Made by a program: the position numbers and the translations under genes. Below the pieces are notes generated by a model that saw only the letters and a list, made by a program, of their open reading frames with translations, did not search any database and had not been told where the DNA came from. Source: Schmidtea nova (lineage: Eukaryota). Taken from it: 64,000 nt of DNA. The stretch covers positions 49,848,001-49,912,000 of the forward strand of contig CM097884.1 of assembly GCA_044892505.1 (NCBI GenBank), given 5' to 3'. Of the stretch, positions 36,501 through 61,567 are shown piece by piece (within the stretch, counting starts at the first letter, position 1; each line of letters begins with the position of its first letter).

Positions 36501-38167
36501 ACGTAAAGAATTGTTAGCAATTTATTATTTTACCAACCACTTTAAACATTATCTATATGGAAAAAGATTTAAATTGAGAACAGATCATAAGGCAATAACG
36601 TTTATGTTAAGAACTAAAAAACCTTTAACACTTCAATTTCAGACATGGATCAACTACCTGAGCGGCTTAGACATTGATATGCAATTTAGAAAAGGTGAAA
36701 GTCATTCTAACGCCGATGCTATGTCAAGAAGTGAATGCACGTCATGCATACAATGCCAAATGATTCACCCAGATCCAAAAGTAAGAAAACTGAAAACCAA
36801 AATTTTGGCTTTGATGACAAATGATAGTGAAAACATTTGGCAAAATAATGTAAAAGAAATTAAAGATATTATCGAAAATAAAGATAAAAAGGAAATAGGT
36901 AAATTTATAGTTCAAAATGGAATAGTAAAAACAGAAACCAATAAAGTATGGATACCTGAAGTGAAAAGAGAAGATTTTATTAAAAATTATCATAAAAAAC
37001 TATGCCATGCTGGGTTTAAAAAAGTTGAAAAATATATTCAAAATAACTTTGCAATGAAAGACATGAACAAAATAATAAAAGAAGTAGTACAAAGTTGTGA
37101 AAACTGTCAAAAAAGGAAAGTGCTGACTACTAAAAGTAAAGAAACAATAAAAGTTCCTCGTGAGGTAGAATTATTTGAATCAATATTTGTTGATTTCTGT
37201 GGACTATTTAAAGCTAATATTAACAATAAAAAAAACATACCAGCTATTATTGATCAGCATAGCAAATATGTATCATTGAATGCAGTGAGTGCCCAAGATG
37301 AAAAAACTACTGCAATGATTCTAAAGAACCAATGGATATTAAAATTTGGATATCGATATTTAAAAGTTTTGAAAGCGCTATGTTGAAAGAACTTTGTACA
37401 TTGCATAACTGTCAACTGGTATTTTCAAGCCCTTATCATCACTCAGCTAACGGACAAATAGAAAGGCAATTTCATACAATTAGGGATGCAATTAATATTT
37501 CACTTAAAGATAAATTTCATAAAAACTGGGTTGAATTGCTTCCAGAAGTTGAATTTATGCTGAACTCAACATTCCAAAAATCAATTAATGAATTTCCTGC
37601 GCAAATTGTTTTTGGGAAAAATATATATCACGAATGGGTGGATCAACAAAATCAAGTTGGATTAGATCAAGTGTGTTCAAAAGAGAATACATATAGAAAT
37701 TTTGCAAATGGTGATATTGTGCTAATTAGAAAAGATTTGCGTAATAAAGAAGATAATCGATATGAAGGCTCAGGAGTAATAACCAATAAACGACATGGAA
37801 GGAGTTATGAAATAAGAATGCCAAATGTTAAAACACTAACAAGAAATGTAGAATGGCTCAAGCCTTTTAAAAGGAGGGGAATGTAAGGAATAAGTTAAAT
37901 AAAGCCTAACTTAATTAATCAACTAATTTAAATATTGTATATTAATTAATTTATAATTTAATAAGTATGGTGTATAAATAATAATTGTAAATATTATATT
38001 AATAATTTAAATAATGATTGTAGAATGATGTTGTCTTGCTCAGAATATTGTGGACGTAAATTAATCCGCTTGTTTAAATATTGTAAATAATAATAAATAT
38101 TTGAATTTCGAATCTTTAGTTAATTTTAAAATGGATACTATTAATACTCGTTCCATACAATCTAACA
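33545..38167 (+). mobile_element. Ty3/Gypsy LTR retrotransposon, near full length but inactivated; 5' LTR truncated
   Basis: 3' LTR 37882-38167 (TG...CA, 286 bp). Its last ~110 bp recur at 33545-33654. PBS TGGCGACCACG from 33655, PPT AAAGGAGGGGAA at 37870-37881. gag has two CX2CX4HX4C knuckles. LLDTGAKIS, YLDD, RNase H (TDAS, ELLA) and integrase HHCC are present. Several premature stops and frameshifts. Confidence 0.96.
34635..34680 (+). promoter_or_regulatory. Candidate -1 programmed ribosomal frameshift site (gag to pol)
   Basis: C CCA AAT heptamer in correct phase with the gag frame, followed after about 6 nt by a possible stem (GCTTTTGCAC...GTGACAGGAGC). The -1 frame is open into the pre-protease ORF. 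Confidence 0.6.
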
Positions 38168-39510: not shown

Positions 39511-39997
39511 TTAAGTTTGTAAATTTATCTAGGCTATGTATGTCGTCATCATTTTCAGAATTTTTAATATCAGAGGAAATTATTTATTATAACAGTTATT
39601 AAATAAAGTATATACAAATAGTACAATTTCTCAAGAACCGTAGCTTACGCCTTAACAAATAATTTTTAGTTCAGAGTAAGAGGTTATTAAATTGCATGAC
39701 AATAAATAAACTAGACTAAGTCTTAGTTAAATGAAACAATAACAATAAAAAGATAGTAAAGAATGAATAAAACTGTATAAAATAAAATTTCTTTCAAATT
39801 TTTATCAGCCCAGTTCGCGAGAGTTAATGTGGTACCGTTAGAAAATTATAATATATAACACAGGATAAATTTATTTAAATACAGTAAAAATAAAATTCAT
39901 TTACAAATAAGAAAAGATCATAAATCATACTTATATAAAAATAAAAATTATAATTAATGATTAAAATTTATTATAAAATTTAAATAATTGTATTTAG

Positions 39998-40134
39998 TAA
40001 TATATGCCCTGATGACACGGACCTAATGAAACCTAACGAACCGGAGCCTGAACCAAAGCGTAAACGGAATAGAGTAGTAATAGAATAGTAATTTTTAGCT
40101 AACTGGTACTCAAATTTTAATTATTTATATCTAT
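39998..40134 (+). pseudogene. Isolated paralogue of the terminal exon of the 44-52.9 kb cassette array
   Basis: TTTAG|T AAT ATA TGC CCT GAT GAC... reads NICPDDTDLMKPNEPEPEPKRKRNRVVIE*, nearly identical to 52779-52851. The following intron-like sequence is cut at 40134. Confidence 0.7.
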
Positions 40135-41359
40135 TGTTGGGCTAGCTAAACAGAGGAAAGAGTAAAATAAACCTATAATAATTGAAACAAAAAGAGAAAA
40201 TATAAGATAAGAAAGGGGAATATTAAATTTAAAAGAAAAAGGGTAATATAAATAAAATATAGATGAATTACTGGTAAATTAAATATAAAAATAGATAAAT
40301 TGAGGAGATTTCCAAAATTAACCGGCATAAGAGACACCTAAAAACAAATAAAATGTAAATATTGATAATTAAAACAAAATAAAAGTATTTTTTATTAAAT
40401 AATTGTTCTGAAAAGCCGGATCACCTAGAAAGAATCGAATCGAATCTAAAAAATAAAAATTAATTAAGTAAAGAAAATAATAATTGGACCTACGGTATAG
40501 ACAATCAAACCTGATTGGTCAAGCTAGACCAGACAGATCAGTATATATACTGATCATAAATTCAGTCAAAAAAAAGATAAGAATAACAAGTTTTAGACAA
40601 CAGACTAGTATTGACACAAACTGAGACATTTAGATCAATTGCGAATTTTACATTGAAACCTAGACATTGTCACATTTCAACGGAACTTGGACCCAATCAC
40701 CAGTTTTCGGATCAATAATCTTAAGTAATTTTAAGTTTGATTTATGTATATGCTTTATGTTGTTGGTTTCGGATTGGGTTAAAACAAAAATAGTAAATTA
40801 AACTAATAATTATTTTTAAACGCTCTAGGGATTCCTCCATCCAAAACCTCACATAAAATGCTTACATATCACACGAGCACCCTCGATCATTTCCCTGTAA
40901 TAATCGAGTTGGAAATGTGCAAGGTGTTTGAACAATGATGGGCAGGTGAGCTCTATTGCTAAAACTACTCCCCATTTATGTTCACGGGTTCGTCTCGCTG
41001 CCGATAGAAGGACTTACGCTTTAAGTTTAATCTATCCGCATCCATTATCTTTCATTTCAATTATTTCTTTAGCCCCCTTTTCTTTACAATATATTTCAAC
41101 TTTCAATTTTTCTTTCGGCCCCCTTCTTTACAATATCAACAAATAATCTTTAATCAATTACAATTTATTATCTCTTTAATGTTTCTATTGTTTATTAGAT
41201 TTATGTTAATCTTATTGTTAGTTCTAATGTATAGTTAATTTATTCTATATTTTCCTTTAAATCATTTTAAATTTTTAATAAATCACATTATTTTCTATAC
41301 TTTACCATAAAATAAATACAAACAAAAATTATTTAATAAGCAAAGAAATCACAAAATTT

Positions 41360-41950
41360 CTATTCAAAGTATTTGGTAATGTCTTCATCGGAAACTACAA
41401 AATCCGTGGTTAAATCAATTTCCGGAATGTTGTTTGATCGTTGTGCCAATTGCTGGAGAACTTGTTTCTTCCAGCGACGCTGACGTGCGCCCATCTTACT
41501 CTTCTTTTTCTTCTTGACCTCTGGATTTATCGGGTTCTTTGGTGTACTGGCTACTGTTGTTGCTTGAACCTGAGAGGGTTCCTCGGTGTTCGTTCCTTTT
41601 GTGCATCCTGCTTTCTCGTCAGCCCAATGTTGATAAGTGATTGGTCGAATGAGCTGGCTGAGCTCTTGAGTTAGATACGATGCCGTTACAGATTTTAGGC
41701 ATTTCTTTAATTCCATCTTCGTCGCGTCCAATTCCATTTGTAATTCGCTGTTAGCTCGCTGAGAGCGTTGAGTTTTTGTAATTTGCATTTTCATTTGTTC
41801 TGGACTGAACCAGCTTTTCTTTAGGTTGGAGATTATGCCATCGGCTTCTTTTATTTTTTCCGATTTTCGCAGCATTTCCTTTTCGAGGCTGCGAATTATC
41901 CTCCATGCTTTGTCTAACTCGGCTTGGTTAGTTGCTGTGTTGGCTGACAT
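41360..41950 (-). CDS. Unknown 196-aa coiled-coil protein with basic and acidic C-terminal motifs (ORF-B family, intact copy)
   Basis: Open GC-richer ORF. It aligns without gaps over 63 aa to 54911-55462, and with one gap to 57863-58231. ATG lies 3 nt after a TTTTAG acceptor. Confidence 0.75.
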   Translation of the reverse strand: MSANTATNQAELDKAWRIIRSLEKEMLRKSEKIKEADGIISNLKKSWFSPEQMKMQITKTQRSQRANSELQMELDATKMELKKCLKSVTASYLTQELSQLIRPITYQHWADEKAGCTKGTNTEEPSQVQATTVASTPKNPINPEVKKKKKSKMGARQRRWKKQVLQQLAQRSNNIPEIDLTTDFVVSDEDITKYFE

Positions 41951-42216: not shown

Positions 42217-42677
42217 GATAAGCAATTATGTTTAATTATTTATCTGGAATGTTTGAACCTATAGCCTATTGCTGCTATGTTACTTGCGTAGTAGATCACT
42301 ACGTTATTAGAGTTATCGATTTTTATGTTGTTATTAAAATTATATTTTGTACAAATTCTTAACCGTGTATCTGCCGCTCTATGCCCACAAACCCCAGATG
42401 TGACAATCGAAAAATATAGCTTAACATTCTGTGAATCTCAAGGTAAAATCAGATTAATCAAATCACAGCTATATCTGTCTCAAACTACAATCAAACCTCA
42501 ACTTAACTATAAACTCAAAAATTTAAATCGATTATAAAATAAAACTTCAACTGGCTATACTATCCAGTGAAAACTAAGGTTAGAAATCAAAAATAAAATT
42601 CCTACCCTCGTCACGGCGCTTTACACCGGTCGGACGGCCTAACTGTACGGAGCAGTCGTTTCTACTCGGCACAGTAT

Positions 42678-42969
42678 GCCTCCATTTCACCGATTGCACG
42701 GTGATCGGAGCCCCTTAAATCGTACGTAATTTCTACTGTATCTACTGTATATAAATAATATATATATATTCGCCTCCTTCCACTGATTTCACAGTAGAAG
42801 AAGCTCGACCCAAAAATGGTTTATAAAAATATACTTCAACCTAATTGTTAATATCACAACATAATGTTGCCTCCTTCCACCGATTACACGATGGAAGAAG
42901 CTCAATAAAAGGTATATAATAGATATATGAAGTCGTCTCCTACCACTGATTGCACAGTGGAAGAAGCTT
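42678..42969 (-). repeat. Four ~35-bp palindromic repeats separated by unique AT-rich spacers
   Basis: Consensus CCTCCTTCCACYG-ATTNCA-CRGTGGAAGAAGCT. Loops start at 42693, 42786, 42883 and 42949. Stems show compensatory T-A to C-G changes. Confidence 0.8.
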
Positions 42970-45900
42970 AGTTCAATTCTATATTTAATAATAATTTAAA
43001 ACATACTCAAAATATTTTATTAAAATAACCAAAATGGTCAATGACAGAACTCATAGAAAAACAAATTTATAAAAACAAGAAAAACAAAATATTTATACCT
43101 TTTATGTTGTTCACAAAATTTGCATATACAAAACAAAATTTTCAATCACTGAAAAATTTTTCACCTATCACTTTATCTATATTTTTAACTGAATCTGGAT
43201 CAGTATTTATACTGACCAGATCAGATGTTGAACCAATCAGCGTGAAGCTGATTATCAGATCAGCACAAATAATAAATTACATTAAAAATCAAATCGATTG
43301 ATTTGCTTTAAATTGCTAATAATTTGTTGTTTTTGATTTTTAATATTCTGTAATTCTTTTTCTTTATTATTTCTTTATTTTGCCTTAAATACAATTAAAT
43401 ATCATTGTTTCTTTAACACTTTTACATTTTCTATTTACTTTCTTCTAAATTTTGATAGAAAATTGATATTCTTTATTACATTTTAATTCGTTTTTACTGA
43501 TATTTTCCATAATTATATTTATTTTAATTTATTCTTATTTTATTTCTTATTATTATTATTTTTTATGCTAAATGTGGATCAAATGGTGGATCCAACATTT
43601 ACATGATTTTGTCATAATAATTACCTTTGTCATATAAATTATATTTCGTATTAATAATTTTGTTCTCTTAATCTTTTTCATACAATTTTTATATGCTAAT
43701 TTTGTGGTGTTAATGAATTGAATTATAGAACTTAAATTATGAAATTTAGTGCGCCGACGGGGAGCAATAGGTTCCCAGGGTGTCACTCCGCATCGTGTGG
43801 TTTCAGAGGCTCCACACATGGTAGAGAAATCAATAAAATTAAATAAAATTCTACAGGGTTGCACATGGAACACAAAGAATCGAGGCAAAAATTTCCGTTG
43901 CGGATAGCAGTGAGTAGGTGAGGGCACTGATTTAAATAAATTATGGCAAACAAGAATAAACCCGAGAAGCGTTATATGTTAACAAATTTAAATCCGAGGC
44001 TGTTTTTATAGGTACATTAACCCTTCTGTATTATATATATAATTTACTTACAGGAAATTGGCGACCATAAATGAAAGATTTAACGGAACAAAGTATTAAT
44101 ATAATAGTAATTTTTAGCTAACAGGTACTCAAATTTTAATTATTTATATCTATTATCCAAAAATTTATTATAAAATTTAAATAATTTTATTTAGCAGTAT
44201 AAGGCCTGAAAACGTAAAAGAACCAAAGCGGAAGCAGAAGAGTAGGCCTATAGTGTGTCCTGGGACTAGGTCTGGTTCTAGGCGTAGACCAGGACCAGAA
44301 CCGGTTCTAATTCTAGACGAGATATCTCGACCAACGTAATTAATTAATTTATTCAATAAATTATTATGTTATTGTATTTTTTTAGTCCAAGTATAACGGA
44401 TGAATATGAAGATCCTCTCTCTTGACCAAACATTACTCCGGTCTCTCAGCGAAATTAAATAATTAATATATTCAATAAATTATTATTTTATTGTATCTTT
44501 TAAGAAGTATAAGAATTATTAACATGAGACGAAATGAACGATTATAATGCCACCATCTATATTGACCAACAGAGAAATCAAAAAGACAACGAGTGGCTTC
44601 AAAGTGAAAAATATTGCCTTAATTAATATAGTCTTTATATTTAGATTTAGTCGAAATTCTTCATGGAAAAAACAGATATAACGGTAAATAAATAACTTTC
44701 TTTAATAAATATATATAATTTACTTACAAAAAATTGGCGACCATAAATGAAAGATTTTACGGAATAGAGTAGTAATGGAATAGTAATTTTTAGCTAACTG
44801 GTACTCAAATTTTAATTATTTATATCTATTATTCAAAAATTTATTATAAAATTTAAATAATTTTATTTAGCAGTATAAGGCCTGAAAACGTAAAAGAACC
44901 AAAGCGGAAGCAGAAGAGTAGGCCAATAGTGTGTCCTGGGACTAGGCCTGGTTCTACGCATAGACCAGGACCAGAACCGGTTCTAATTCTAGACGAGGTA
45001 TCTCGACCAACGTAATTAATTTATTTATTCAATAAATTATTATGTTATTGTATTTTTTTAGTCCAAGTATAACGGATGAATATGAAGATCCGAACATTAC
45101 ACTGGTCTCTCAGCGAAAGTAAATAATTATTATCTTCAATAAATAATTATTTTTTTAATCTTTTTAGAAGCGAAAGAATTATTAACAAGAGGCAAAGTGA
45201 ACAGTTTATAATGCCGCCTTCTGAGACTCTGGCAGAGAAAAGACGAATGGCTTCAAAGTAAAAAATATTACATTTAATAATATTGTCTTTATATTTAGAT
45301 TTAGTTGAAATTCTTCATTGAAAATACAGATAGAACGGTAAATAAATAATTTTTTTTAATAAATATATATAAATTACTTACAGAAAATTGGCGAAACCAA
45401 ATGTAAGATTTAACGGAAAAGAGGGGAGATTTAATGGAATAGAGTAGTAATAGAATAGTAATTTTTAGCTAACTGGTACTCAAATTTTAATTATTTATAT
45501 CTATTATCCAAAAATTTATTATAAAATTTAAATAATTTTATTTAGCAGTATAAGGCCTGAAAACGTAAAAGAACCAAAGCGGAAGCAGAAGAGTAGGCCA
45601 ATAGTGTGTCCTGGGACTAGGCCTGGTTCTACGCATAGACCAGGACCAGAACCGGTTCTAATTCTAGACGAGGTATCTCGACCAACGTAATTAATTTATT
45701 TATTCAATAAATTATTATGTTATTGTATTTTTTTAGTCCAAGTATAACGGATGAATATGAAGATCCGAACATTACACTGGTCTCTCAGCGAAAGTAAATA
45801 ATTATTATCTTCAATAAATAATTATTTTTTTAATCTTTTTAGAAGCGAAAGAATTATTAACAAGAGGCAAAGTGAACAGTTTATAATGCCGCCTTCTGAG

Positions 45901-48900
45901 ACTCTGGCAGAGAAAAGACGAATGGCTTCAAAGTAAAAAATATTACATTTAATAATATTGTCTTTATATTTAGATTTAGTTGAAATTCTTCATTGAAAAT
46001 ACAGATAGAACGGTAAATAAATAATTTTTTTTAATAAATATATATAAATTACTTACAGAAAATTGGCGAAACCAAATGTAAGATTTAACGGAAAAGAGGG
46101 GAGATTTAATGGAATAGAGTAGTAATAGAATAGTAATTTTTAGCTAACTGGTACTCAAATTTTAATTATTTATATCTATTATCCAAAAATTTATTATAAA
46201 ATTTAAATAATTTTATTTAGCAGTATAAGGCCTGAAAACGTAAAAGAACCAAAGCGGAAGCAGAAGAGTAGGCCTATAGTGTGTCCTGGGACTAGGTCTG
46301 GTTCTAGGCGTAGACCAGGACCAGAACCGGTTCTAATTCTAGACGAGATATCTCGACCAACGTAATTAATTAATTTATTCAATAAATTATTATGTTATTG
46401 TATTTTTTTAGTCCAAGTATAACGGATGAATATGAAGATCCTCTCTCTTGACCAAACATTACTCCGGTCTCTCAGCGAAATTAAATAATTAATATATTCA
46501 ATAAATTATTATTTTATTGTATCTTTTAAGAAGTATAAGAATTATTAACATGAGACGAAATGAACGATTATAATGCCACCATCTATATTGACCAACAGAG
46601 AAATCAAAAAGACAACGAGTGGCTTCAAAGTGAAAAATATTGCCTTAATTAATATAGTCTTTATATTTAGATTTAGTCGAAATTCTTCATGGAAAAAACA
46701 GATATAACGGTAAATAAATAACTTTCTTTAATAAATATATATAATTTACTTACAAAAAATTGGCGACCATAAATGAAAGATTTTACGGAATAGAGTAGTA
46801 ATGGAATAGTAATTTTTAGCTAACTGGTACTCAAATTTTAATTATTTATATCTATTATTCAAAAATTTATTATAAAATTTAAATAATTTTATTTAGCAGT
46901 ATAAGGCCTGAAAACGTAAAAGAACCAAAGCGGAAGCAGAAGAGTAGGCCAATAGTGTGTCCTGGGACTAGGCCTGGTTCTACGCATAGACCAGGACCAG
47001 AACCGGTTCTAATTCTAGACGAGGTATCTCGACCAACGTAATTAATTTATTTATTCAATAAATTATTATGTTATTGTATTTTTTTAGTCCAAGTATAACG
47101 GATGAATATGAAGATCCGAACATTACACTGGTCTCTCAGCGAAAGTAAATAATTATTATCTTCAATAAATAATTATTTTTTTAATCTTTTTAGAAGCGAA
47201 AGAATTATTAACAAGAGGCAAAGTGAACAGTTTATAATGCCGCCTTCTGAGACTCTGGCAGAGAAAAGACGAATGGCTTCAAAGTAAAAAATATTACATT
47301 TAATAATATTGTCTTTATATTTAGATTTAGTTGAAATTCTTCATTGAAAATACAGATAGAACGGTAAATAAATAATTTTTTTTAATAAATATATATAAAT
47401 TACTTACAGAAAATTGGCGAAACCAAATGTAAGATTTAACGGAAAAGAGGGGAGATTTAATGGAATAGAGTAGTAATAGAATAGTAATTTTTAGCTAACT
47501 GGTACTCAAATTTTAATTATTTATATCTATTATCCAAAAATTTATTATAAAATTTAAATAATTTTATTTAGCAGTATAAGGCCTGAAAACGTAAAAGAAC
47601 CAAAGCGGAAGCAGAAGAGTAGGCCAATAGTGTGTCCTGGGACTAGGCCTGGTTCTACGCATAGACCAGGACCAGAACCGGTTCTAATTCTAGACGAGGT
47701 ATCTCGACCAACGTAATTAATTTATTTATTCAATAAATTATTATGTTATTGTATTTTTTTAGTCCAAGTATAACGGATGAATATGAAGATCCGAACATTA
47801 CACTGGTCTCTCAGCGAAAGTAAATAATTATTATCTTCAATAAATAATTATTTTTTTAATCTTTTTAGAAGCGAAAGAATTATTAACAAGAGGCAAAGTG
47901 AACAGTTTATAATGCCGCCTTCTGAGACTCTGGCAGAGAAAAGACGAATGGCTTCAAAGTAAAAAATATTACATTTAATAATATTGTCTTTATATTTAGA
48001 TTTAGTTGAAATTCTTCATTGAAAATACAGATAGAACGGTAAATAAATAATTTTTTTTAATAAATATATATAAATTACTTACAGAAAATTGGCGAAACCA
48101 AATGTAAGATTTAACGGAAAAGAGGGGAGATTTAATGGAATAGAGTAGTAATAGAATAGTAATTTTTAGCTAACTGGTACTCAAATTTTAATTATTTATA
48201 TCTATTATCCAAAAATTTATTATAAAATTTAAATAATTTTATTTAGCAGTATAAGGCCTGAAAACGTAAAAGAACCAAAGCGGAAGCAGAAGAGTAGGCC
48301 TATAGTGTGTCCTGGGACTAGGTCTGGTTCTAGGCGTAGACCAGGACCAGAACCGGTTCTAATTCTAGACGAGATATCTCGACCAACGTAATTAATTAAT
48401 TTATTCAATAAATTATTATGTTATTGTATTTTTTTAGTCCAAGTATAACGGATGAATATGAAGATCCTCTCTCTTGACCAAACATTACTCCGGTCTCTCA
48501 GCGAAATTAAATAATTAATATATTCAATAAATTATTATTTTATTGTATCTTTTAAGAAGTATAAGAATTATTAACATGAGACGAAATGAACGATTATAAT
48601 GCCACCATCTATATTGACCAACAGAGAAATCAAAAAGACAACGAGTGGCTTCAAAGTGAAAAATATTGCCTTAATTAATATAGTCTTTATATTTAGATTT
48701 AGTCGAAATTCTTCATGGAAAAAACAGATATAACGGTAAATAAATAACTTTCTTTAATAAATATATATAATTTACTTACAAAAAATTGGCGACCATAAAT
48801 GAAAGATTTTACGGAATAGAGTAGTAATGGAATAGTAATTTTTAGCTAACTGGTACTCAAATTTTAATTATTTATATCTATTATTCAAAAATTTATTATA

Positions 48901-50566
48901 AAATTTAAATAATTTTATTTAGCAGTATAAGGCCTGAAAACGTAAAAGAACCAAAGCGGAAGCAGAAGAGTAGGCCAATAGTGTGTCCTGGGACTAGGCC
49001 TGGTTCTACGCATAGACCAGGACCAGAACCGGTTCTAATTCTAGACGAGGTATCTCGACCAACGTAATTAATTTATTTATTCAATAAATTATTATGTTAT
49101 TGTATTTTTTTAGTCCAAGTATAACGGATGAATATGAAGATCCGAACATTACACTGGTCTCTCAGCGAAAGTAAATAATTATTATCTTCAATAAATAATT
49201 ATTTTTTTAATCTTTTTAGAAGCGAAAGAATTATTAACAAGAGGCAAAGTGAACAGTTTATAATGCCGCCTTCTGAGACTCTGGCAGAGAAAAGACGAAT
49301 GGCTTCAAAGTAAAAAATATTACATTTAATAATATTGTCTTTATATTTAGATTTATTTGAAATTCTTCATGGAAAAAACCGATAGAACGGTAAATAAATA
49401 ATTTTCCTTAATAAATATATATAATTTACTTACAAAAAATTGGCGACCATAAATGAAAGATTTAACGGAATAGAGTAGTAATAGAATAGTAATTTTTAGC
49501 TAACTGGTACTCAAATTTTAATTATTTATATCTATTATCCAAAAATTTATTATAAAATTTAAATAATTTTATTTAGCAGTATAAGGCCTGAAAACGTAAA
49601 AGAACCAAAGCGGAAGCAGAAGAGTAGGCCTATAGTGTGTCCTGGGACTAGGTCTGGTTCTAGGCGTAGACCAGGACCAGAACCGGTTCTAATTCTAGAC
49701 GAGATATCTCGACCAACGTAATTAATTAATTTATTCAATAAATTATTATGTTATTGTATTTTTTTAGTCCAAGTATAACGGATGAATATGAAGATCCTCT
49801 CTCTTGACCAAACATTACTCCGGTCTCTCAGCGAAATTAAATAATTAATATATTCAATAAATTATTATTTTATTGTATCTTTTAAGAAGTATAAGAATTA
49901 TTAACATGAGACGAAATGAACGATTATAATGCCACCATCTATAATGACCAACAGAGAAATCAAAAAGACAACGAGTGGCTTCAAAGTAAATAATATTGCC
50001 TTTAATAATATTGTCTTTATATTTAGATTTAGTCGAAATTCTTCATGGAAAAAACAAATAGAACGGTAAATAAATAATTTTCTTTAATAAATATATATAA
50101 TTTACTTACAAAAAATTGGCGACCATAAATGAAAGATTTAACGGAATAGAGTAGTAATGGAATAGTAATTTTTAGCTAACTGGTACTCAAATTTTAATTA
50201 TTTATATCTATTATCCAAAAATTTATTATAAAATTTAAATAATTTTATTTAGCAGTATAAGGCCTGAAAACGTAAAAGAACCAAAGCGGAAGCAGAAGAG
50301 TAGGCCTATAGTGTGTCCTGGGACTAGGCCTGGTTCTACGCATAGACCAGGACCAGAACCGGTTCTAATACTTGACGAGGTATCTCGAACAACATAATTT
50401 ATTTATTTATTCAATATATTATTATGTTATTGTATTTTTTAGTCCAAGTATAACGGATAGACGAAATGAACGATCTGGATGCCCCAATTTATGGGAAGAA
50501 CAAATGTAAGAATTTGTTAAAATTTATTATTGAATTTACTTTTTAATTTGAGTTTTTAATTTAAAT

Positions 50567-50655
50567 AATACTTTTAATATATTATTTTTAAATCATTTTG
50601 TAATTGTTTTTCAAACCATTACAAAATGATTTAAAAGTATAATATTAAAAGTATT
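50567..50655. repeat. Long AT-rich inverted repeat (arms about 37 bp)
   Basis: AATACTTTTAATAT...TTTTAAATCATTTTGTAAT / ATTACAAAATGATTTAAAA...ATATTAAAAGTATT. Confidence 0.8.
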
Positions 50656-50669
50656 TATATTATGAAATA

Positions 50670-51186
50670 TTCATTTTACTTTTTTTTTTGATAAAAAACA
50701 TTTATGTAATAGAATTATATATATGAAACAATTTACTTTATTCATTTTTTGATAAAAAACATTTATGAAATAGAATTATATATGAAACAATTTAATTTAT
50801 TCATTTTTTGATAAGAAACATTTATGAAATAGAATTATATATGAAACAATTTAATTTATTCATTTTTTGATAAGAAACATTTATGAAATAGAATTATATA
50901 TATGAAACAATTTACTTTATTCATTTTTTGATAATAAACATTTATGAAATAGAATTATTTTTGATAAAAAACATTTATGAAATAGAATTATATATGAAAC
51001 AATTTACTTTATTCATTTTTTGATAATAAACATTTATGAAATAGAATTATATATATGAAACAATTTACTTTATTCATTTTTTGATAAAAAACATTTATGA
51101 AATAGAATTATATATGAAACAATTTACTTTATTCATTTTTTGATAATAAACATTTATGAAATAGAATTATTTTTGATAAAAAACAT
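50670..51186. repeat. Minisatellite of 59-61 bp units (two 33-bp short units)
   Basis: TTTTTTGATAA(A/T)AAACATTTATGAAATAGAATTATATATGAAACAATTTACTTTATTCA, about 10 copies. Confidence 0.92.
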
Positions 51187-51329
51187 TAAAGAAATATTTT
51201 TTATGTAACAACATATTATTATTATTATTGATATAATTTATTTTTATTTTATTTATAATGTTATATATTGAAAATTTATTTAAATATTTATTTAAATTCA
51301 GGTTTAATCTACAAAAATTTTTGCAACAG

Positions 51330-51765
51330 TAGGTTCCATAATGATTGCCATGTCATTATGGAAAAATACTACTCGTTGACATATATTACTGTTACCCACC
51401 TCCTATGTCCCACCTGTAAACTTATCGAAATTTCCAGATATCTTGATTTCTTTAATAGGCACTGTAGCCATCTTTCGCAGTTTCAGCCTTCCAAGAAAAT
51501 TTTATGTAAGGAAATTTTTCCTAATTTTATTAATAACAACAACCAAATTATTCCTATAAATAACAATAATCTAAATAATAATCTAAATAATACAAATAAT
51601 CTAAATAATACAAATAATAATCATACAAATAATTTAAATAATATCAATAATACAAATAATACAAATAATACAAATAATTTAAATAATAATAAAAGAAAAC
51701 ATATTAAAATACCGGATTCAGTTCCTACTAAAATTCAAATAATAGATCTCACTGATGATGAATAA
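51330..51765 (+). CDS. Putative exon encoding a His/Cys motif, an Asn-rich tract and an IIDLTDDE tail
   Basis: Part of ORF 51268-51765. The acceptor TTTTTGCAACAG|T at 51329 is in phase 2 with the upstream 63-nt exon 50443-50505. Reads RFHNDC...LLCPTCK...HCSH, then N-rich repeats. Confidence 0.4.
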
Positions 51766-52959
51766 TTAGTCATCAGTGATGATGAAAATTTAAATAATAA
51801 TAATTTAAATAATATTAACCAAATAGGATATGGTGCCGTCGAGATCGTAAATGATCTAAATAATAATCATATAATTATTAAAATGGACGTTGAAAATTAA
51901 AATTTGAAATATATATAATAAATATATATAATTTACTTACAAAAAATTGGCGACCATAAATAAAAGATTTAACGGAATAGAGAAGTAATAGAATAGTAAT
52001 TTTTAGCTAACTGGTACTCAAATTTTAATTATTTATATCTATTATCCAAAAATTTATTATAAAATTTAAATAATTTTATTTAGCAGTATAAGGCCTGAAA
52101 ACGTAAAAGAACCAAAGCGGAAGCAAAGAGTAGGCCTATAGTGTGTCCTGGGACTAGGCCTGGTTCTAGGTATAGACCAGGACCAGAACCGGTTCTAATT
52201 CTAGACGAGGTATCTCGAACAACATAATTAATTTATTTATTCAATATATTATTATGTTATTGTAATTTTTAGTCCAAGTATAGCGGATGAATATGAAGAT
52301 CCTCTCTCTTGACCAAACATTACTCCGGTCTCTCAGCGAAATTAAATAATTAATATATTCAATAAATTATTATTTTATTGTATCTTTTAAGAAGTATAAG
52401 AATTATTAACATGAGACGAAATGAACGATTATAATGCCACCATCTATAATGACCAACAGAGAAATCAAAAAGACAACGAGTGGCTTCAAAGTAAAAAATA
52501 TTGCCTTTAATAATATTGTCTTTATATTTAGATTTAGTCGAAATTCTTCATGGAAAAAACAGATAGAACGGTAAATAAATAATTTTCCTTAATAAATATA
52601 TATAATTTACTTACAGAAAATTGGCGACCATAAATGAAAGATTTAACGCAATAGAGGGGAGATTTAACGGAAAAGAGTAGTAATATAATAATAATTTTTA
52701 GCTAACTGGTACTCAAATTTTAATTATTTATATCTATTATCGAAAATTTTATTATTAAATTTAAATATTTTTATTTAGTAATATAAGCCCTGATGACACG
52801 GACCTAATGAAACCTAATTATCCGGAGCCTGAACCGAAGTGTAAACGTTAGATTTATTCAATAAATTCTTTCAGAAATGTATCCAGTATTTATTTAAAAA
52901 GTATTCCAAATCACCATAATTTATTCAAAGATTTTATAAAAATTTAAACAAATGTTGCG

Positions 52960-53700
52960 ACAACCTTCAAATTTTTAATCAAACCATTTTATAGAAAATT
53001 AAAGTTTAAATTTACAATACTACAATAAAAATTCAATTAAGTTACTTTATATATGTTTGCAATGTAAAATTTAATTATTAATTGTATATGCAGCGGCGGA
53101 ACTACTGGACGCAGGACCCTGCGTTGCGGGGGGGCCTACCAGCTATAGGGGGTCCTCATATAAAAAAATTATACTCTCAATAATATTTATACTATAAAAC
53201 TCTTTTCCGCAGGTATAGTGGGCCCTAAAATATAAAACTTGGATAAAAAAAATGTCATCCATCGTATTAAAATATATTGTTCAAAAATTTATTTTTGTAT
53301 TGGAGTGCGTAGTTTACATTTAAACGAAAAGTTTTACCCTTTTTATTATTAACCTTTTTATTATCTATTTAATATGTGAAGCTTTATTTTTTTAAAAAAA
53401 AACATTCTTTTGCGGGGGGGCCCAAATTTTGAAGTTCCGCCACTGTGTATATGCAACTTAAAATTAATAACTTCTAATTTTGAATCAAACCATTTTATAG
53501 AAAATTAAAATTTATTTATACTCTATTACAATGAAAACTCAAAAATTACTTCATTTAGAAGAAAAACACAAAAATTAATAACAAAACACTTGTGCATCAC
53601 AAAATTCGACAAACCAATTTTCCAACCAAGCCATTTTGTAGAAAATTAATTTTTACACAAAATTTATTAGAATAAAAACTCAAAAAATGAACCCATTTTT
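52960..53700. repeat. ~143-bp tandem repeat, left part (resumes at 58600-58870)
   Basis: AATCAA(A/G)CCATTTTRTAGAAAATT recurs near 52977, 53484, 53626, 58669 and 58812. The period is 142-144 once the MITE is removed. Confidence 0.75.
53091..53445. mobile_element. hAT-type MITE (355 bp) with 8-bp TSD
   Basis: Termini CAGCGGCGGAACT / AGTTCCGCCACTG. TSD TGTATATG at 53083-53090 and 53446-53453. TTGCGGGGGGGCC subterminal motif at both ends. Confidence 0.95.
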
Positions 53701-54616: not shown

Positions 54617-54910
54617 CACCCATCCCCGGAGCTATATCACGCAGACGGGACCCGACGAGACGATAATCCAGCTGACCAAGATTTACGATCTTTCTGTTAG
54701 AAGAGAGAATGTCGCACACAGAAAAATCAGGAGATTAAGTTAATCCTATGTCATAATTAAAATAAATGTCTGTTTGAAAAAGATTTCTTGTTTTGTTTTC
54801 TGAATGCATGTAACGAGTGGATGATTAAGGAGTAGTTGATTGATCATGAAGACACGAATAGAGAGACGAATAGATTTCCACTACATCAATTAACATCAAA
54901 TATTACAGAC

Positions 54911-55462
54911 ATGAACGTGGACAACACTCGAAACTATAAACAGGAGGCTCGGGAGCACAAGGCTCGCTCCAAGGTCCTAGAGAGCCGCTTACATCAGTTA
55001 AGTGAGGAGCACCAACGCGTGAAGACGACATGGTTCAACTCCGAGAGGGTCAAGGCCATCCTACAGGCGAGATATCGCGCGGAACAGGCAGCCGAAGAGC
55101 AAGCCAGAGAAGTCGCAGCATTAAAATTGGAACTGACCAATTATCTAAAAACCTCGACGCAGGAATTCATAACCGAGCAGTTACGCCCAATGATCAGGGC
55201 AAGTACGTTCAATAAGTGGATAAAGACAATAGCAGTCACCACCAGTACTCAAACCGAAACGGAGACAACCGCAACAGCGACTACTGAGTCGATAATGATA
55301 ACTCCGGAAGGCTCTAAGAGGATTTAACGTCGAAATCGCCTCGGAGCAAAGAAACGTCGAGAGCGTCGAGCCTATGCCGAACGTCTGGGCATTGAGGTCG
55401 ATCTACTCAGTGGACTCTCCGAACAAGAACTATTAAACGTGATCCGGCCATCTGTTCTGTTA
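54911..55462 (+). pseudogene. ORF-B family coiled-coil protein (unit X2) with one internal TAA at 55325-55327
   Basis: ATG lies 2 nt after TACAG. The frame beyond the stop (RRNRLGAKKRRERR...IEVDL) matches the C-terminus of 41360-41950 (KSKMGARQRRWKK...PEIDL). Confidence 0.75.
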
Positions 55463-58231: not shown

Positions 58232-59199
58232 CAAACGAACTAAATAAAGCTGCAGCCGAGATCGATTCAACCACAAATGCAACCAATGGGATCGATAATT
58301 CACTGTGGAATGTAAATTAATGTTATGAGAGTGAATGCGTGTATAATTGAGGATCCTTGTTGTTCTTCTTTGATAAAGTTCTATCATAGATTGATAGTAG
58401 TAGTGATTTCAGGGAAAATTGAATTTTATTGAGTAGGCTAATAAAGTGTTGTAATGCCGAGTACCTAAGACAATTTTTTTTTGAATATGGATTTAAGGGA
58501 CAAGAAAAGAGACTGAAAAAGACCACCCGGAAAGAGTGACCAGAGAAGGGTGAGGGGAAAGAGAATAAGACCTTCTATCGGCCAGTTAGAACCCGAACTA
58601 AAATTAATAACAAAAAATTAATAACAAAACACGTGTGTAACACGAAAAACGACAACTTTTAAATTTAGAATCAAGCGATTTTATAGAAATTTAAATTTTA
58701 TCTATACTTTATTACAATGAAAACTCAAAAAATTATTTTAAATAGCTAAAACTTACAAAATTAATAACAAAACACATGTACATCACAAAATACGACAATT
58801 TTCAGATTTTTAATCAAGCCATCTTGTAAACAATAAAATTCTGTCTATCTTTTGTTTCACTAAAAACTCAATCGGGCCGGTTAATCGACTCGAAAAAGGC
58901 ATTTAAGGTTTTGTAGTAGGAGGCTATCTTCTGTCTGCGCCAATATCCGCAAATGGGCATAATATATAATCGCTCGGGTTTACGTAGTACACGTTATTAC
59001 ATAATCATTGTAATTAAGTATATTTAATGAAACTCAATAATTATGTAATTACACATATAATTACGTAATTTTATATATTTGTTTAAGTTAAGTGAATTTT
59101 TGTTTTAATTAACTGGAATACTTGTTTTAATTAGATGACTTTTTTGTTTTAATTTAATAAAAATATGAAAATTTCATTTTAAATTTAATAAAAAATATG

Positions 59200-61567
59200 A
59201 GTTCACACATGCGACCCGTCGACATATTGTCTGCGGCCCATCACGATAGATTATTTAACATTTCAGTCAACCTTAATTTTTTTAAATAACTCGTAAATTA
59301 CCATATGTATTTCAAAAATTTACATCTACATTTCATATTGTTAAGACAAAATAAAATTTTTCATCATAACAGATGGTTACATGCATGTGCACGTGAAGTA
59401 ATCAGATACTTAGTAAAGAATCAGATAATTTTCGATTGAAGCAGCACAGCATCAGAAATACTTGCGTAACTCTAGTGATGTTCTACTTCAACAAACGCAT
59501 GTGCGTACCGTTTTGACGTGTCCTGACGTGTGAGGTTTTTTTGCGTTTATTAATCAATTTTCACTATTTTTCTATTCTTTCTTTTGTAATCAATTACGAA
59601 TTTTTCAAACCATTTAGCATGGAGAAAAATTGGTGAATTGAAGAAGAACATCGTAGTTTTCATGAAAATGGGAGGTACAATACTTTTTTATACAAGAACA
59701 AAATAAAATAATATGTCTGATATGTAGAAAATCTATTGCAATTTGCAAAGAATATAATATTAGAAGACACTACGAGACATCATAGCAAAGGTTATGACAA
59801 ATATATTGCGAAACTACGTGATGATAAATTGTCAGAATTAAAGTTGACACTTCAAAACAACAAAGTTATTTACCAAACCTGTTGAAGATAATACAGCTGC
59901 TGTAAAAATTAGTTATTTGTTATCAGATTTAATTGCAAGAAAGTGAAGACCGTTCACTGAAGGCGAATTTATCCATGAATGCATGATTAAAGCAGTGGAA
60001 GTGTTGTGTCCAGAACAATTAAAGAAATTCAAAAATATAAGCTTAACTCGAAATACGATTGCTAGCAGGGTTGATGATATAGCAGAATTTAAAAATTCAA
60101 TTAAAATCAACAATCCCATCAATTTGAGACCTATTCTATAGCAAGTGACGAAAGTACGGATGTGCAGAATACCGCTCAGTTGGCTATTTTTATTCGTGGA
60201 TGTGATGTGAATGTAAAAGTAAGTGAAGAGCTTTTAGAAATTGTTCCTATGCACGATATAACTACAGGAGTTGATATTTTTAACAAACTAATGGATGTTT
60301 TTATTGACTACAATTTATCGTAAAAAATCTAGTTTGTCTTGCAACTGACGATGCACCTGCCATGACTGGCAGTGTTAAAGGAGTCATTAAAAACTTAAAA
60401 GAAAAATGCAGAGAACAAGGTAATACTTATGTTCAACATTTTCATTGCATTATCCATAAACAAACATTGTGCTCCAAAGTTTTAAATATCGAGCATGTAC
60501 TAAAAATGTAGCTAAAATTGTGAATTACATTCGTGCACGCGGTCTTAATCATCGTCAATTTAGCAAGTTCCTAGAAGACATAGAAAATGAATTCACCGAT
60601 CTACCGTATTTCACGGAAATTCGTTGGCTTTCCAATCATAAAGTTTTGAAGCGTTTCTTCAAATTGCGGGAAGAAATATTATTTTTTTGGAATCGAAAAA
60701 TTATGAATGTGAAATAATAAAAGATGATCAATGGATAAAGGACATGGCTTTTTCAGTTGACATTACAAATCACCTCAGTCAGCTAAATCTTAAACTACAA
60801 GGCAAACATCATGTAGTTACTATTTTATTTGGCAATATCAATGTTTTCAAACAAAAATTAATTCTTTGGCAAAAACAGATACAAAATGAAATTTAATCTG
60901 ACTTTGAATGTTGCCAGTCATTATTACAAAAATCACCGGATCTCAAATTTTCAGAATATTCAAATCAAATTAAATTGTTAGAAAATGAATTCGAAAGAAG
61001 GTTTTTGGATTTCAAAGAATGTAAAACACGATTTCAACTATTTAATTCTCCTTTTCCATAGATGTTACAACTGTTGATGACATTTTACAATTGGAATTAA
61101 TAGAAATTCAATGCGATTCCATATTAAAACAGAAATATATGGAAGTTAGGATTCCAGATTTTTATATGTTATTTAACGGTCGACAGATTTCCCAATGTAA
61201 TGCATGCGATTATGCGTATATTATCAATGTTTGGTAGCACATATTTGTGAGAACCATTATTTTCAATATTAAAAAACAATAAAACTACAGAAAGATTGAG
61301 ATTAACAGACAAGCATCTGCAATCAACTTTAAAAATAAATGCAGCTCAACAAATTCAGCCAAATTTTGAAGATGTGGTTAATGAAAAACGTTCTCAAATA
61401 TCTTCAAAAAATGAATACGATGATTTTTTTTTGTACGATTGTTATTTAACAATTTCAGTATAATAAAAAATGGTTTCTCATACGTTGAGTTGTGTTTTTA
61501 CAGTGTGGCTTGCTTAATGTTCAATGCTTAATGTGGCCCTTGGTGGTAAACGAGTTTGACATGCCTG
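59200..61567 (+). mobile_element. Buster-group hAT transposon (GTF2IRD2/SPIN-like transposase pseudogene, about 59619-61445)
   Basis: YFF...CLICRKSIAICKEYNIRRHYET, DESTDVQNTAQLAIFIRG, TDDAPAM, HCIIH, TEIRWLS, FGSTYL...FS. Right TIR CGAGTTTGACATGCCTG ends at 61567 and is followed by GTGTAGAT (nnnTAnnn). The left TIR tip is missing. Confidence 0.92.

What the first reader, a model, noticed from the sequence alone, without database searches (positions are those of the whole stretch)
44054..52851. The 'satellite' is a tandem array of five symmetric phase-2 exons
In unit 3, GT-AG introns define exons 45384-45443, 45546-45686, 45737-45793, 45843-45932 and 45974-46012. All five lengths are multiples of 3 and join in one frame: KLAKPNVRFNGKEGRFNGID SIRPENVKEPKRKQKSRPIVCPGTRPGSTHRPGPEPVLILDEVSRPT PSITDEYEDPNITLVSQRK SERIINKRQSEQFIMPPSETLAEKRRMASK FS*NSSLKIQIER, with a single CGA>TGA stop. 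The array ends in a terminal exon (...PEPEPKCKR*, 52779-52851) with AATAAA 9 nt later. Every copy has some broken exon or splice site, but since all exons are symmetric, skipping them keeps the frame. It is either a decaying amplified gene or a combinatorial exon-cassette locus making variable basic/Pro-rich disordered proteins. The exon-a donor (GA|GTAGTA) is weak, and a candidate first exon at 43943-44011 is off by one base.
Basis: partly seen in the sequence, partly recalled or inferred. Interest (0 to 1): 0.8.

Follow-up and report, generated by a model that had tools for sequence, protein, structure and literature searches.

The report
Tandemly amplified, decaying five-exon gene fragment
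A 675-base block holding five small exons and their introns has been copied head to tail about eleven times in an AT-rich animal genome, but the copies carry shared stop codons and broken splice sites, so it looks like a gene fragment turning into satellite-like repeat DNA, not a working variable-protein locus.

Summary
Positions 44033-52851 are about 11 head-to-tail units of ~675 bp. All lengths are multiples of 3, and all are open in one frame except exon e, which has a TGA. Exons are 26-49% GC and introns 9-15%. A chain of four or more such exons arose in 2 of 2000 composition-preserving shuffles and 0 of 800 window controls, so the unit very likely derives from real exons and introns.

The functional reading is not supported.
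- No unit has all five exons intact.
- The stops, frameshifts and lost splice sites are shared by all copies of a unit type, so defective exons were amplified.
- Many stop-bearing exons keep intact AG/GT.
- The only in-frame ATGs within units u1-u11 lie in exon d, at most 18 codons before a stop.
- No in-phase first exon exists.
- Exons differ more than introns between unit types (10% against 6%).
- Synonymous to nonsynonymous changes are about 5:25.
- A 2026-bp three-unit block repeats with perfect identity over 5.2 kb.
- Exon b has no relatives in any database searched.

Best reading: a recently amplified, unprocessed, decaying multi-exon fragment. It is a new member of a known kind and of modest interest.

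The parts
44033..50455 (+). Main tandem array: units u1-u9 complete (about 654-697 bp, depending on exon variants), u10 truncated inside exon c
44124..49355 (+). Perfect higher-order repeat. The period is 2026 bp (three units): 44124-47329 is letter-for-letter identical to 46150-49355
45384..45443 (+). Exon a of unit 3 (60 nt). A 39-nt form lacking a 21-nt internal duplication occurs in u1, 2, 5, 8-11. The acceptor is AA instead of AG in u2, 5, 8-11
45546..45686 (+). Exon b of unit 3 (141 nt, 49% GC, basic and Pro-rich). Open in u1-u10, donor lost in u10 and u11, 1-nt deletion in u11
45737..45793 (+). Exon c of unit 3 (57 nt). Type-A units have a 12-nt insert carrying TGA, and TT in place of the GT donor
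45843..45932 (+). Exon d of unit 3 (90 nt). It holds the only in-frame ATGs within units u1-u11. The type-A version is 99 nt, with -1 and +1 indels plus a 9-nt insert, and two stops
45974..46012 (+). Exon e of unit 3 (39 nt). It has a TGA in u2, 3, 5, 6 and 8 and a TAA in u1, 4 and 7, and is open only in u9 and u11. Splice sites are intact throughout
50456..51921 (.). Unrelated 1.47-kb interruption of the array. It contains an imperfect palindrome (50544-50678), a 59-bp tandem repeat (about 50602-51240) and an Asn-rich ORF (51268-51765)
51922..52616 (+). Unit u11 (type A, most degraded): exon a lacks both splice sites, exon b is frameshifted, and exons c and d carry stops
52617..52851 (+). Partial unit u12: exon a (52617-52676), intron, then exon b' (52779-52851). 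Exon b' is a diverged exon-b homologue that runs into a TAG where exon b has its donor
39963..40135 (+). Relic 3.9 kb upstream. It consists of the 3' part of intron a-b, a second copy of exon b' (no stop) fused to the last 8 nt of exon a, and the 5' part of intron a-b. The hybrid exon is 76 nt and not symmetric
43943..44011 (+). It is out of phase with exon a and shows no homology to the unit

Best explanation
This is a DNA-level tandem amplification of a roughly 675-bp piece of a gene. The piece was copied with its introns and is now a decaying, satellite-like pseudo-exon array.

Most likely history:
1. A gene for a basic, Pro-rich, probably disordered protein grew by duplicating symmetric phase-2 exons. 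Exons b, c, d and b' still begin with the same octamer, and introns b-c and c-d are paralogous.
2. The five-exon block a-e was then multiplied, presumably by unequal crossing-over or replication slippage.
3. Two unit types arose. Type A lost exons c, d and e to stops, a frameshift and a lost donor. Type B acquired a CGA>TGA stop in exon e.
4. These already defective units kept being amplified and homogenised. Last came a three-unit, 2026-bp block that is still letter-perfect over 5.2 kb.
5. The right end was then broken by a deletion and a 1.47-kb insertion.

Shown here: the structure, the defects, their sharing among copies, the absence of a coding-selection signal, and the absence of relatives.
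Inferred: the mechanism of amplification, the order of events, and that no protein is made today.
For: Exon origin:
- Canonical AG/GT at all ten boundaries, all lengths multiples of 3, and one common open frame in exons a-d.
- Exon GC of 26-49% against intron GC of 9-15%.
- A chain of four or more such exons arose in 2 of 2000 block shuffles and 0 of 800 window controls.
- The donor and acceptor style matches the one verified intron of the window's AdoHcyase gene: GTAAAA ... T-rich tract ending in TAG.

Decay:
- No unit has five intact exons.
- The type-A defects occur in all five type-A units, u1, 4, 7, 9 and 11. The exon-e TGA occurs in all five type-B units.
- Stop-bearing exons d (type A) and e keep AG/GT.
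- Within units u1-u11, in-frame Met occurs only in exon d, at most 18 codons before a stop.
- No in-phase first exon exists.

No coding constraint:
- Type A against type B, exons differ by 10.1% and introns by 6.2%. Exon d differs by 30%.
- Synonymous to nonsynonymous changes are about 5:25 over roughly 90 synonymous and 303 nonsynonymous sites.

Recent amplification: 3206 bp are exactly identical at an offset of 2026 bp.

Rearrangement: truncated u10 plus the insert, and the relic at 39963-40135.

Setting: TE-rich, with hAT, Ty3/gypsy and other relics.

No relatives of exon b:
- Pfam.
- Word search.
- phmmer against 1.84 billion representatives. The one hit is a salmon repeat protein, which I judge spurious: 25 matched residues summed over 6 repeats.
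- Metagenome contigs.
- Viral contigs.
Against: - Exon b is open in 10 of 11 copies, and exon a is open everywhere. Transcripts built from a and b exons alone would stay in frame.
- Three of the indels that separate exon variants preserve the frame (21 nt, 12 nt and a net 9 nt). This points to coding constraint at some time in the past, and its end cannot be dated.
- Copies within a unit type are nearly identical, so few independent substitutions exist. The 5:25 count has little power.
- This genome's own proteins are not in the databases: its hAT transposase finds nothing above 50% identity, and three exact look-ups fail. The lack of an annotated gene model here is therefore uninformative.
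- No transcript data could be consulted.
- The perfect 5.2-kb periodicity could partly be an assembly artefact.
Confidence: 0.7

Rival explanations
1. It is a working gene. A long primary transcript across the array is alternatively spliced, and because every exon is symmetric, any subset keeps the frame. The product would be variable, basic, Pro-rich repeat proteins.
For: - All exon variants have lengths that are multiples of 3, and all junction codons are sense.
- Exon b is intact, with splice sites, in u1-u9.
- Symmetric exons that encode disordered segments and arise by tandem duplication are a documented route to modular proteins (PMC3632108).
Against: - There is no in-phase start exon, and no in-frame ATG in exons a, b, c or e.
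- Exons with stops keep good AG/GT, so they should be included and trigger nonsense-mediated decay.
- Defects are shared by all copies of a unit type.
- Exons diverge faster than introns, and there is no synonymous excess.
- The array is interrupted by 1.47 kb of foreign sequence.
- Six of twelve exon-a acceptors are AA.
- No homologue exists anywhere.
Confidence: 0.08
2. It is a gene fragment captured and multiplied inside, or by, a mobile element. The array would then be the cargo or internal tandem repeat of a transposon, not a decayed resident gene.
For: - The surroundings are full of mobile-element remains: hAT, Ty3/gypsy and other RT/integrase relics.
- Two related coiled-coil ORFs lie on opposite strands either side of the array, at 41360-41950 (-) and 54836-55327 (+). 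They share 33% identity, E 7e-11.
- A rearranged relic of the unit lies 3.9 kb upstream.
Against: - No terminal inverted or long direct repeats bracket the array.
- No other copy of the unit occurs in the remaining 55 kb apart from the relic.
- The flanking ORFs match no known transposase or gag family.
Confidence: 0.12
3. It is an ordinary non-genic satellite whose exon-like look is coincidence, helped by AT-richness and by sub-repeats that copy the same pseudo-boundaries.
For: - A loose search for symmetric open AG...GT chains succeeds in 5% of shuffles and often in control DNA.
- Introns b-c and c-d, and the starts of exons b, c and d, are paralogous, so the boundaries are not independent.
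- GTAA and AATAAA are common in this sequence.
Against: - With composition constraints the pattern is rare: 2 of 2000 shuffles and 0 of 800 controls.
- Introns a-b, d-e and e-a are unrelated to the others, yet they also run from GT to AG.
- Only the offset-1 frame on the + strand is open in all of exons a-d.
- The exon length variants differ by 21, 12 and 9 nt.
Confidence: 0.06
4. The array length and its perfect 2026-bp periodicity are partly an assembly artefact, and the true locus has fewer units.
For: 5.2 kb of perfectly periodic sequence is the kind of region that assemblers can expand or collapse.
Against: Units outside the perfect block (u1's start, u8's end, u9, u10 and u11) each carry private differences. 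A multi-unit array therefore exists regardless.
Confidence: 0.04

Closest known systems
Multi-exon intragenic tandem repeats of functional genes: LPA kringle IV-2 units, NBPF Olduvai exon doublets arranged in three-domain higher-order repeats, nebulin and titin super-repeat exon blocks (from my own knowledge, not tested here)
   Same: The repeat unit contains whole exons plus introns. The exon lengths sum to a multiple of 3, so copy number can change without a frameshift. There is a higher-order repeat of several units, and recent, nearly identical copies.
   Different: In those genes the reading frame runs uninterrupted through the repeats, and the array sits between defined start and end exons of an expressed gene. 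Here no unit is fully open, no start exon is in phase, and the array is interrupted.
Symmetric exons encoding intrinsically disordered modules that multiply by internal tandem duplication (PMC3632108)
   Same: Runs of same-phase symmetric exons. The successive exons b, c and d are homologous to each other. The encoded peptides are basic, Pro-, Ser- and Thr-rich and of low complexity.
   Different: That work describes expressed human genes. Here the exons carry stops, and no expression or selection can be shown.
Duplicated exon blocks and tandem pseudogene arrays in repeat-rich chromosome regions, such as extra partial exon sets beside Drosophila Y-linked genes (PMC8794474); Stellate/Su(Ste)-type gene-derived tandem arrays (own knowledge)
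   Same: Subsets of a gene's exons are copied with their introns, sit in TE-rich sequence, and vary and decay quickly, with an unclear effect on any protein.
   Different: There the parent gene is known and lies next to the copies. Here no parent gene or homologue was found, and the chromosome context is unknown.
Clusters of alternative cassette exons (Dscam-type mutually exclusive exon arrays; own knowledge)
   Same: Tandem variants of homologous exons that could in principle be chosen combinatorially.
   Different: Dscam-type clusters repeat one exon, not a five-exon block. All variants are intact and under purifying selection, and choice relies on conserved intronic RNA pairing elements. 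None of this is seen here.

Membership tests
Functional intragenic multi-exon tandem repeat (LPA KIV-2 / NBPF Olduvai type) | The repeat unit holds complete exons with canonical splice sites | tested here: met
   Unit 3 has AG/GT at all ten boundaries. Other units have lost some.
Functional intragenic multi-exon tandem repeat (LPA KIV-2 / NBPF Olduvai type) | Exon lengths preserve the frame from unit to unit | tested here: met
   All exon variants are multiples of 3 (39/60, 141, 57/69, 90/99, 39) and share phase 2.
Functional intragenic multi-exon tandem repeat (LPA KIV-2 / NBPF Olduvai type) | The open reading frame is uninterrupted through the repeats | tested here: not met
   Each of units u1-u9 and u11 has at least one exon with a stop, and u10 is truncated with several lost splice sites. 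The longest ATG-started in-frame run is 18 codons.
Functional intragenic multi-exon tandem repeat (LPA KIV-2 / NBPF Olduvai type) | The array is embedded between an in-phase start exon and a terminal exon of one gene | tested here: not met
   The candidate start exon 43943-44011 is out of phase and ends in TAG. The terminal exon exists, but its AATAAA is the same motif found in every intron b-c.
Functional intragenic multi-exon tandem repeat (LPA KIV-2 / NBPF Olduvai type) | Transcribed and spliced as predicted | not testable with these tools
   No transcript data for this genome are available here.
Satellite-like tandem repeat with higher-order structure | Head-to-tail units of constant length | tested here: met
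   Spacing of 654-676 bp over 10 or more copies.
Satellite-like tandem repeat with higher-order structure | A higher-order repeat whose copies are more alike than neighbouring units | tested here: met
   u2=u5, u3=u6 and u4=u7 with 0 differences, against 57-69 substitutions between type A and type B. There is a 3206-bp exact match at an offset of 2026 bp.
Satellite-like tandem repeat with higher-order structure | High copy number or several arrays in the genome | not testable with these tools
   Only this 64-kb window is available. It holds one array of about 11 units and one relic.
Unprocessed (duplicated) pseudogene | Retains introns, so it was copied as DNA and not through mRNA | tested here: met
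   Five AT-rich GT...AG introns per unit.
Unprocessed (duplicated) pseudogene | Disabling mutations: stops, frameshifts, lost splice sites | tested here: met
Unprocessed (duplicated) pseudogene | An identifiable functional parent gene or homologue | tested here: not met
   Exon b has no relative in Pfam, the word search, 1.84 billion representatives, or metagenome and viral contigs. The rest of this genome could not be searched, so a parent gene may still exist.
Dscam-type alternative exon cluster | All alternative exon copies are intact and interchangeable | tested here: not met
   Many copies carry stops or lack splice sites.
Dscam-type alternative exon cluster | Purifying selection on the exon variants | tested here: not met
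   Exons are more diverged than introns, and synonymous to nonsynonymous changes are about 5:25. Power is low.

The most novel reading that the evidence does not exclude
The array is still transcribed, and exon-skipping yields in-frame messages made mostly of exon b, with or without a, c and d. The product would be proteins with a variable number of a 47-residue basic, Pro-rich module. That module contains a Lys/Arg cluster and a hydrophobic-then-acidic stretch (VLILDE-x-S). From memory, this stretch resembles a SUMO-interaction motif. The locus would then be a young, copy-number-variable source of multivalent disordered proteins, with the stop-bearing exons acting as 'poison' cassettes that tune output.
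Probability: 0.06. Interest if true: 0.7.

Novelty: new member of a known kind. Interest (0 to 1): 0.3.

Why it matters
If the main reading is right, the locus is a clean snapshot of a coding gene fragment becoming repeat DNA. Exon and intron outlines, the reading frame and splice signals are still legible. Meanwhile the block is being amplified and homogenised with its defects. It is a useful example for annotation, because gene predictors will be tempted to call a long repetitive protein here. It is also a useful example for studies of satellite birth. It opens no new question by itself. Only proof of regulated splicing into real proteins would make it important.

Tried and rejected
Searches that found nothing:
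- Pfam scan of exons b and d, the terminal exon, the insert ORF and an upstream ORF: nothing.
- Word search with exon b: nothing, but it sees only proteins of 26-82 aa.
- Full phmmer of exon b against 1.84 billion representatives. The one hit is a salmon repeat protein that matches 25 residues six times over, which I rejected as spurious.
- Back-translated and degenerate-pattern scans of metagenome contigs and viral contigs: nothing.
- Rfam and tRNA scans of the whole window: nothing.

Attempts to name the species:
- hAT transposase search: best hit 50% identity, scattered over molluscs, insects and Hydra.
- AdoHcyase exon search: best hit 89% in an unnamed ENA metagenome contig; the best named hit is Schistosoma at 78%.
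- Exact look-ups of three window ORFs: not on record.
- The organism stays 'an AT-rich metazoan'.

Ideas tested and rejected or limited:
- Reverse-strand reading: rejected. No shared open frame and no splice-compatible boundaries.
- My first, loose chance test was uninformative and was replaced by a composition-aware one.
- A search for terminal repeats bracketing the array found none.
Full report
**What is there**

The window is about 31% GC and comes from an animal. It carries an S-adenosylhomocysteine hydrolase gene whose C-terminal exon scores 379 bits against the mammalian enzymes. It also carries an intact hAT transposase ORF, a Ty3/gypsy element and other retroelement relics. I could not name the species. 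The closest hAT protein is 50% identical. The closest AdoHcyase fragment is 89% identical and lies on an unnamed metagenome contig. Exact look-ups of three window ORFs are not on record.

From 44033 to about 50455 the sequence is a head-to-tail array with a period of 654-676 bp. I resolved units u1-u10. A 1.47-kb unrelated interruption follows.

In unit 3 the five blocks lie exactly where stated.
- Each is preceded by AG and followed by GT.
- Lengths are 60, 141, 57, 90 and 39 nt.
- All are open with one leading base, which is intron phase 2. The exception is exon e, with one TGA where other units have CGA.
- Junction codons are all sense.
- Exon blocks are 26-49% GC and intron blocks 9-15%.
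- Donors are GTAA-type (GTAGTA for exon a), and four of the five acceptors are T-rich tracts ending in TAG (exon a's ends in CAG). The one intron I could verify in the AdoHcyase gene has the same style.

Is this more than chance?
- A permissive dynamic-programming search for chains of symmetric, open, AG...GT-bounded segments is not convincing. It matched the real value in 26 of 500 shuffles and often in control DNA.
- I then required AT-rich introns and GC-richer exons. A chain of four or more exons appeared in 2 of 2000 shuffles that keep the composition profile. It appeared in none of 800 control pieces from elsewhere in the window, on either strand.
- The minus strand of the unit gives nothing comparable.

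So the unit very probably descends from real exons and introns. One qualification applies. Introns b-c and c-d are paralogous (z = 5.1). Exons b, c, type-A d and b' all start with the same octamer. There was therefore an older round of single-exon duplication, and the five exons are not fully independent evidence.

**Unit types and defects**

Two unit types exist.
- Type B (u2, 3, 5, 6, 8) has open exons a-d and a TGA in exon e.
- Type A (u1, 4, 7, 9, 11) has three defects. Exon c has a 12-nt insert carrying TGA and has TT in place of its donor. Exon d has a -1/+1 pair of indels plus 9 extra bases, giving two stops. In u1, 4 and 7, exon e ends in TAA.

Other defects:
- The exon-a acceptor is AA instead of AG in six units.
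- u10 has lost the donor of exon b, and u11 has lost that donor and the exon's frame.
- No unit has all five exons intact.

Three points matter for interpretation.
- Every defect is shared by all copies of its type, so the defects predate the amplification steps that made those copies.
- Several stop-bearing exons (type-A d, and e in u1-u8) keep perfect AG/GT, so nothing in the sequence suggests they would be skipped.
- Within units u1-u11, in-frame methionines occur only in exon d, at most 18 codons before a stop. Any protein would therefore have to start in an upstream exon.

The only upstream candidate, 43943-44011, is 69 nt long and ends in an in-frame TAG directly before its GT.

**Selection**

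Between type A and type B, exons differ at 10.1% of aligned sites and introns at 6.2%. Exon d differs at 30%. That gives roughly 5 synonymous and 25 nonsynonymous changes, over about 90 synonymous and 303 nonsynonymous sites. The power is low, because copies within a type are almost identical. The frame-preserving indels of 21 nt, 12 nt and a net 9 nt hint at coding constraint earlier in the history.

**Age and dynamics**

- u2, u3 and u4 are identical to u5, u6 and u7.
- Positions 44124-47329 equal 46150-49355 letter for letter. The sequence is thus perfectly periodic at 2026 bp over 5.2 kb.
- By inference, this last amplification is very recent. Alternatively it is partly an assembly product, which I cannot test.
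- The right end is rearranged. u10 fuses the start of exon c to the middle of exon d. It then runs into foreign sequence that carries a palindrome, a 59-bp tandem repeat and an Asn-rich ORF.
- A 173-bp relic lies 3.9 kb upstream (39963-40135). It joins the end of intron a-b, a second copy of exon b' without the stop, the last 8 nt of exon a, and the start of intron a-b.
- The 'terminal' exon b' is a diverged exon b that reads into a TAG where exon b has its donor. The AATAAA that follows is the same motif found in every intron b-c. AATAAA occurs 46 times on this strand in the array.

**Relatives**

Exon b is the longest and best-kept exon. It has no match in any of the following:
- Pfam.
- The word search, which is limited to proteins of 26-82 aa.
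- A full phmmer scan of 1.84 billion representatives. The single hit is a salmon satellite-like repeat protein that matches 25 residues in six repeats, which I reject as spurious.
- Metagenome contigs.
- Viral contigs.

This genome's own proteins are absent from these collections. The blank therefore says 'no detectable homologues in other organisms'. It does not say 'no gene model here'.

**Interpretation**

The best explanation (confidence 0.7) is an unprocessed multi-exon gene fragment that was amplified in tandem at the DNA level. It is now decaying while still being amplified and homogenised, so it is a gene-derived, satellite-like array.

The rivals:
- A functional exon-cassette locus (0.08) is disfavoured by the shared defects and by stop-bearing exons that still look spliceable. 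The lack of a start exon, the interruption and the substitution pattern also count against it.
- A mobile-element origin or cargo (0.12) is suggested only by the TE-rich setting and by two related coiled-coil ORFs that flank the array on opposite strands. No bracketing repeats were found.
- Pure coincidence (0.06) is disfavoured.
- An assembly artefact (0.04) could change the copy number but not the nature of the locus.

**Comparison with known systems**

In architecture it resembles multi-exon intragenic repeats such as LPA KIV-2 or the NBPF Olduvai triplets (my own knowledge). It also resembles the tandem duplication of symmetric, disorder-encoding exons described in PMC3632108. It fails the defining tests of a continuous frame and in-phase flanking exons, so I do not file it there.

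It fits better with duplicated partial exon sets and tandem pseudogene arrays in repeat-rich regions, such as those on Drosophila Y chromosomes (PMC8794474). The difference is that no parent gene is known here.

It is a new member of a known kind. Interest is 0.3, mainly as a tidy example of satellite birth from coding sequence and as an annotation trap.

Noticed in passing
window 26458-28299 (+): Uninterrupted 613-aa hAT-family transposase ORF (BED zinc finger plus hAT dimerisation domain). Its closest database relatives are only 50% identical and are scattered over molluscs, insects and Hydra. It is possibly a young, active element of an unsampled lineage.
   Followed up: partly
window 33545-38167 (+): Ty3/gypsy LTR retrotransposon. 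Direct repeats of at least 110 nt (97% identical) at 33545-33654 and 38058-38167 bracket ORFs for protease-RT, RNase H and integrase, split over several frames.
   Followed up: partly
window 1457-5048 (+): GC-richer (about 45%) stretch with fragmented RT and integrase zinc-finger ORFs: a second, more degraded retroelement.
   Followed up: no
window 10509-12054 (-): S-adenosylhomocysteine hydrolase gene, apparently intact. Two large exons are separated by a roughly 222-nt GTAAAA...TTTCTAG intron. This is the only clear host gene in the window and the only verified intron for comparison.
   Followed up: partly
window 41360-41950 (-) and 54836-55327 (+): Two related coiled-coil ORFs (33% identity over 67 aa, E 7e-11) flank the array on opposite strands and match no Pfam family. 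The first ends in a hydrophobic-acidic tail (IDLT...VVSDED). A similar tail ends the Asn-rich ORF inside the array's insertion (51268-51765), and exon b contains a comparable stretch.
   Followed up: partly
window 50544-51240: Inside the interruption of the array: a 66-nt-arm imperfect palindrome (50544-50609 / 50613-50678, 79% complementary), followed by about 9 copies of a 59-bp AT-rich tandem repeat with 153-bp and 212-bp higher periods.
   Followed up: no
window 42600-42970: Several copies of a roughly 40-60-nt GC-richer motif, each containing a short hairpin (e.g. CTTCCA...TGGAAG), spaced by AT-rich sequence. Origin unknown.
   Followed up: no
window 52958-53686 and 58606-58871: Dispersed or locally repeated element of about 90-220 bp (73-82% identity) downstream of the array. 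There is also a GC-rich patch at 53090-53230 of unknown nature.
   Followed up: no
window 60469-60717 (+): 82-aa ORF whose sequence, by eye only, resembles the C-terminal dimerisation region of hAT-type transposases. It may be a further hAT relic. It was not scanned against Pfam.
   Followed up: no
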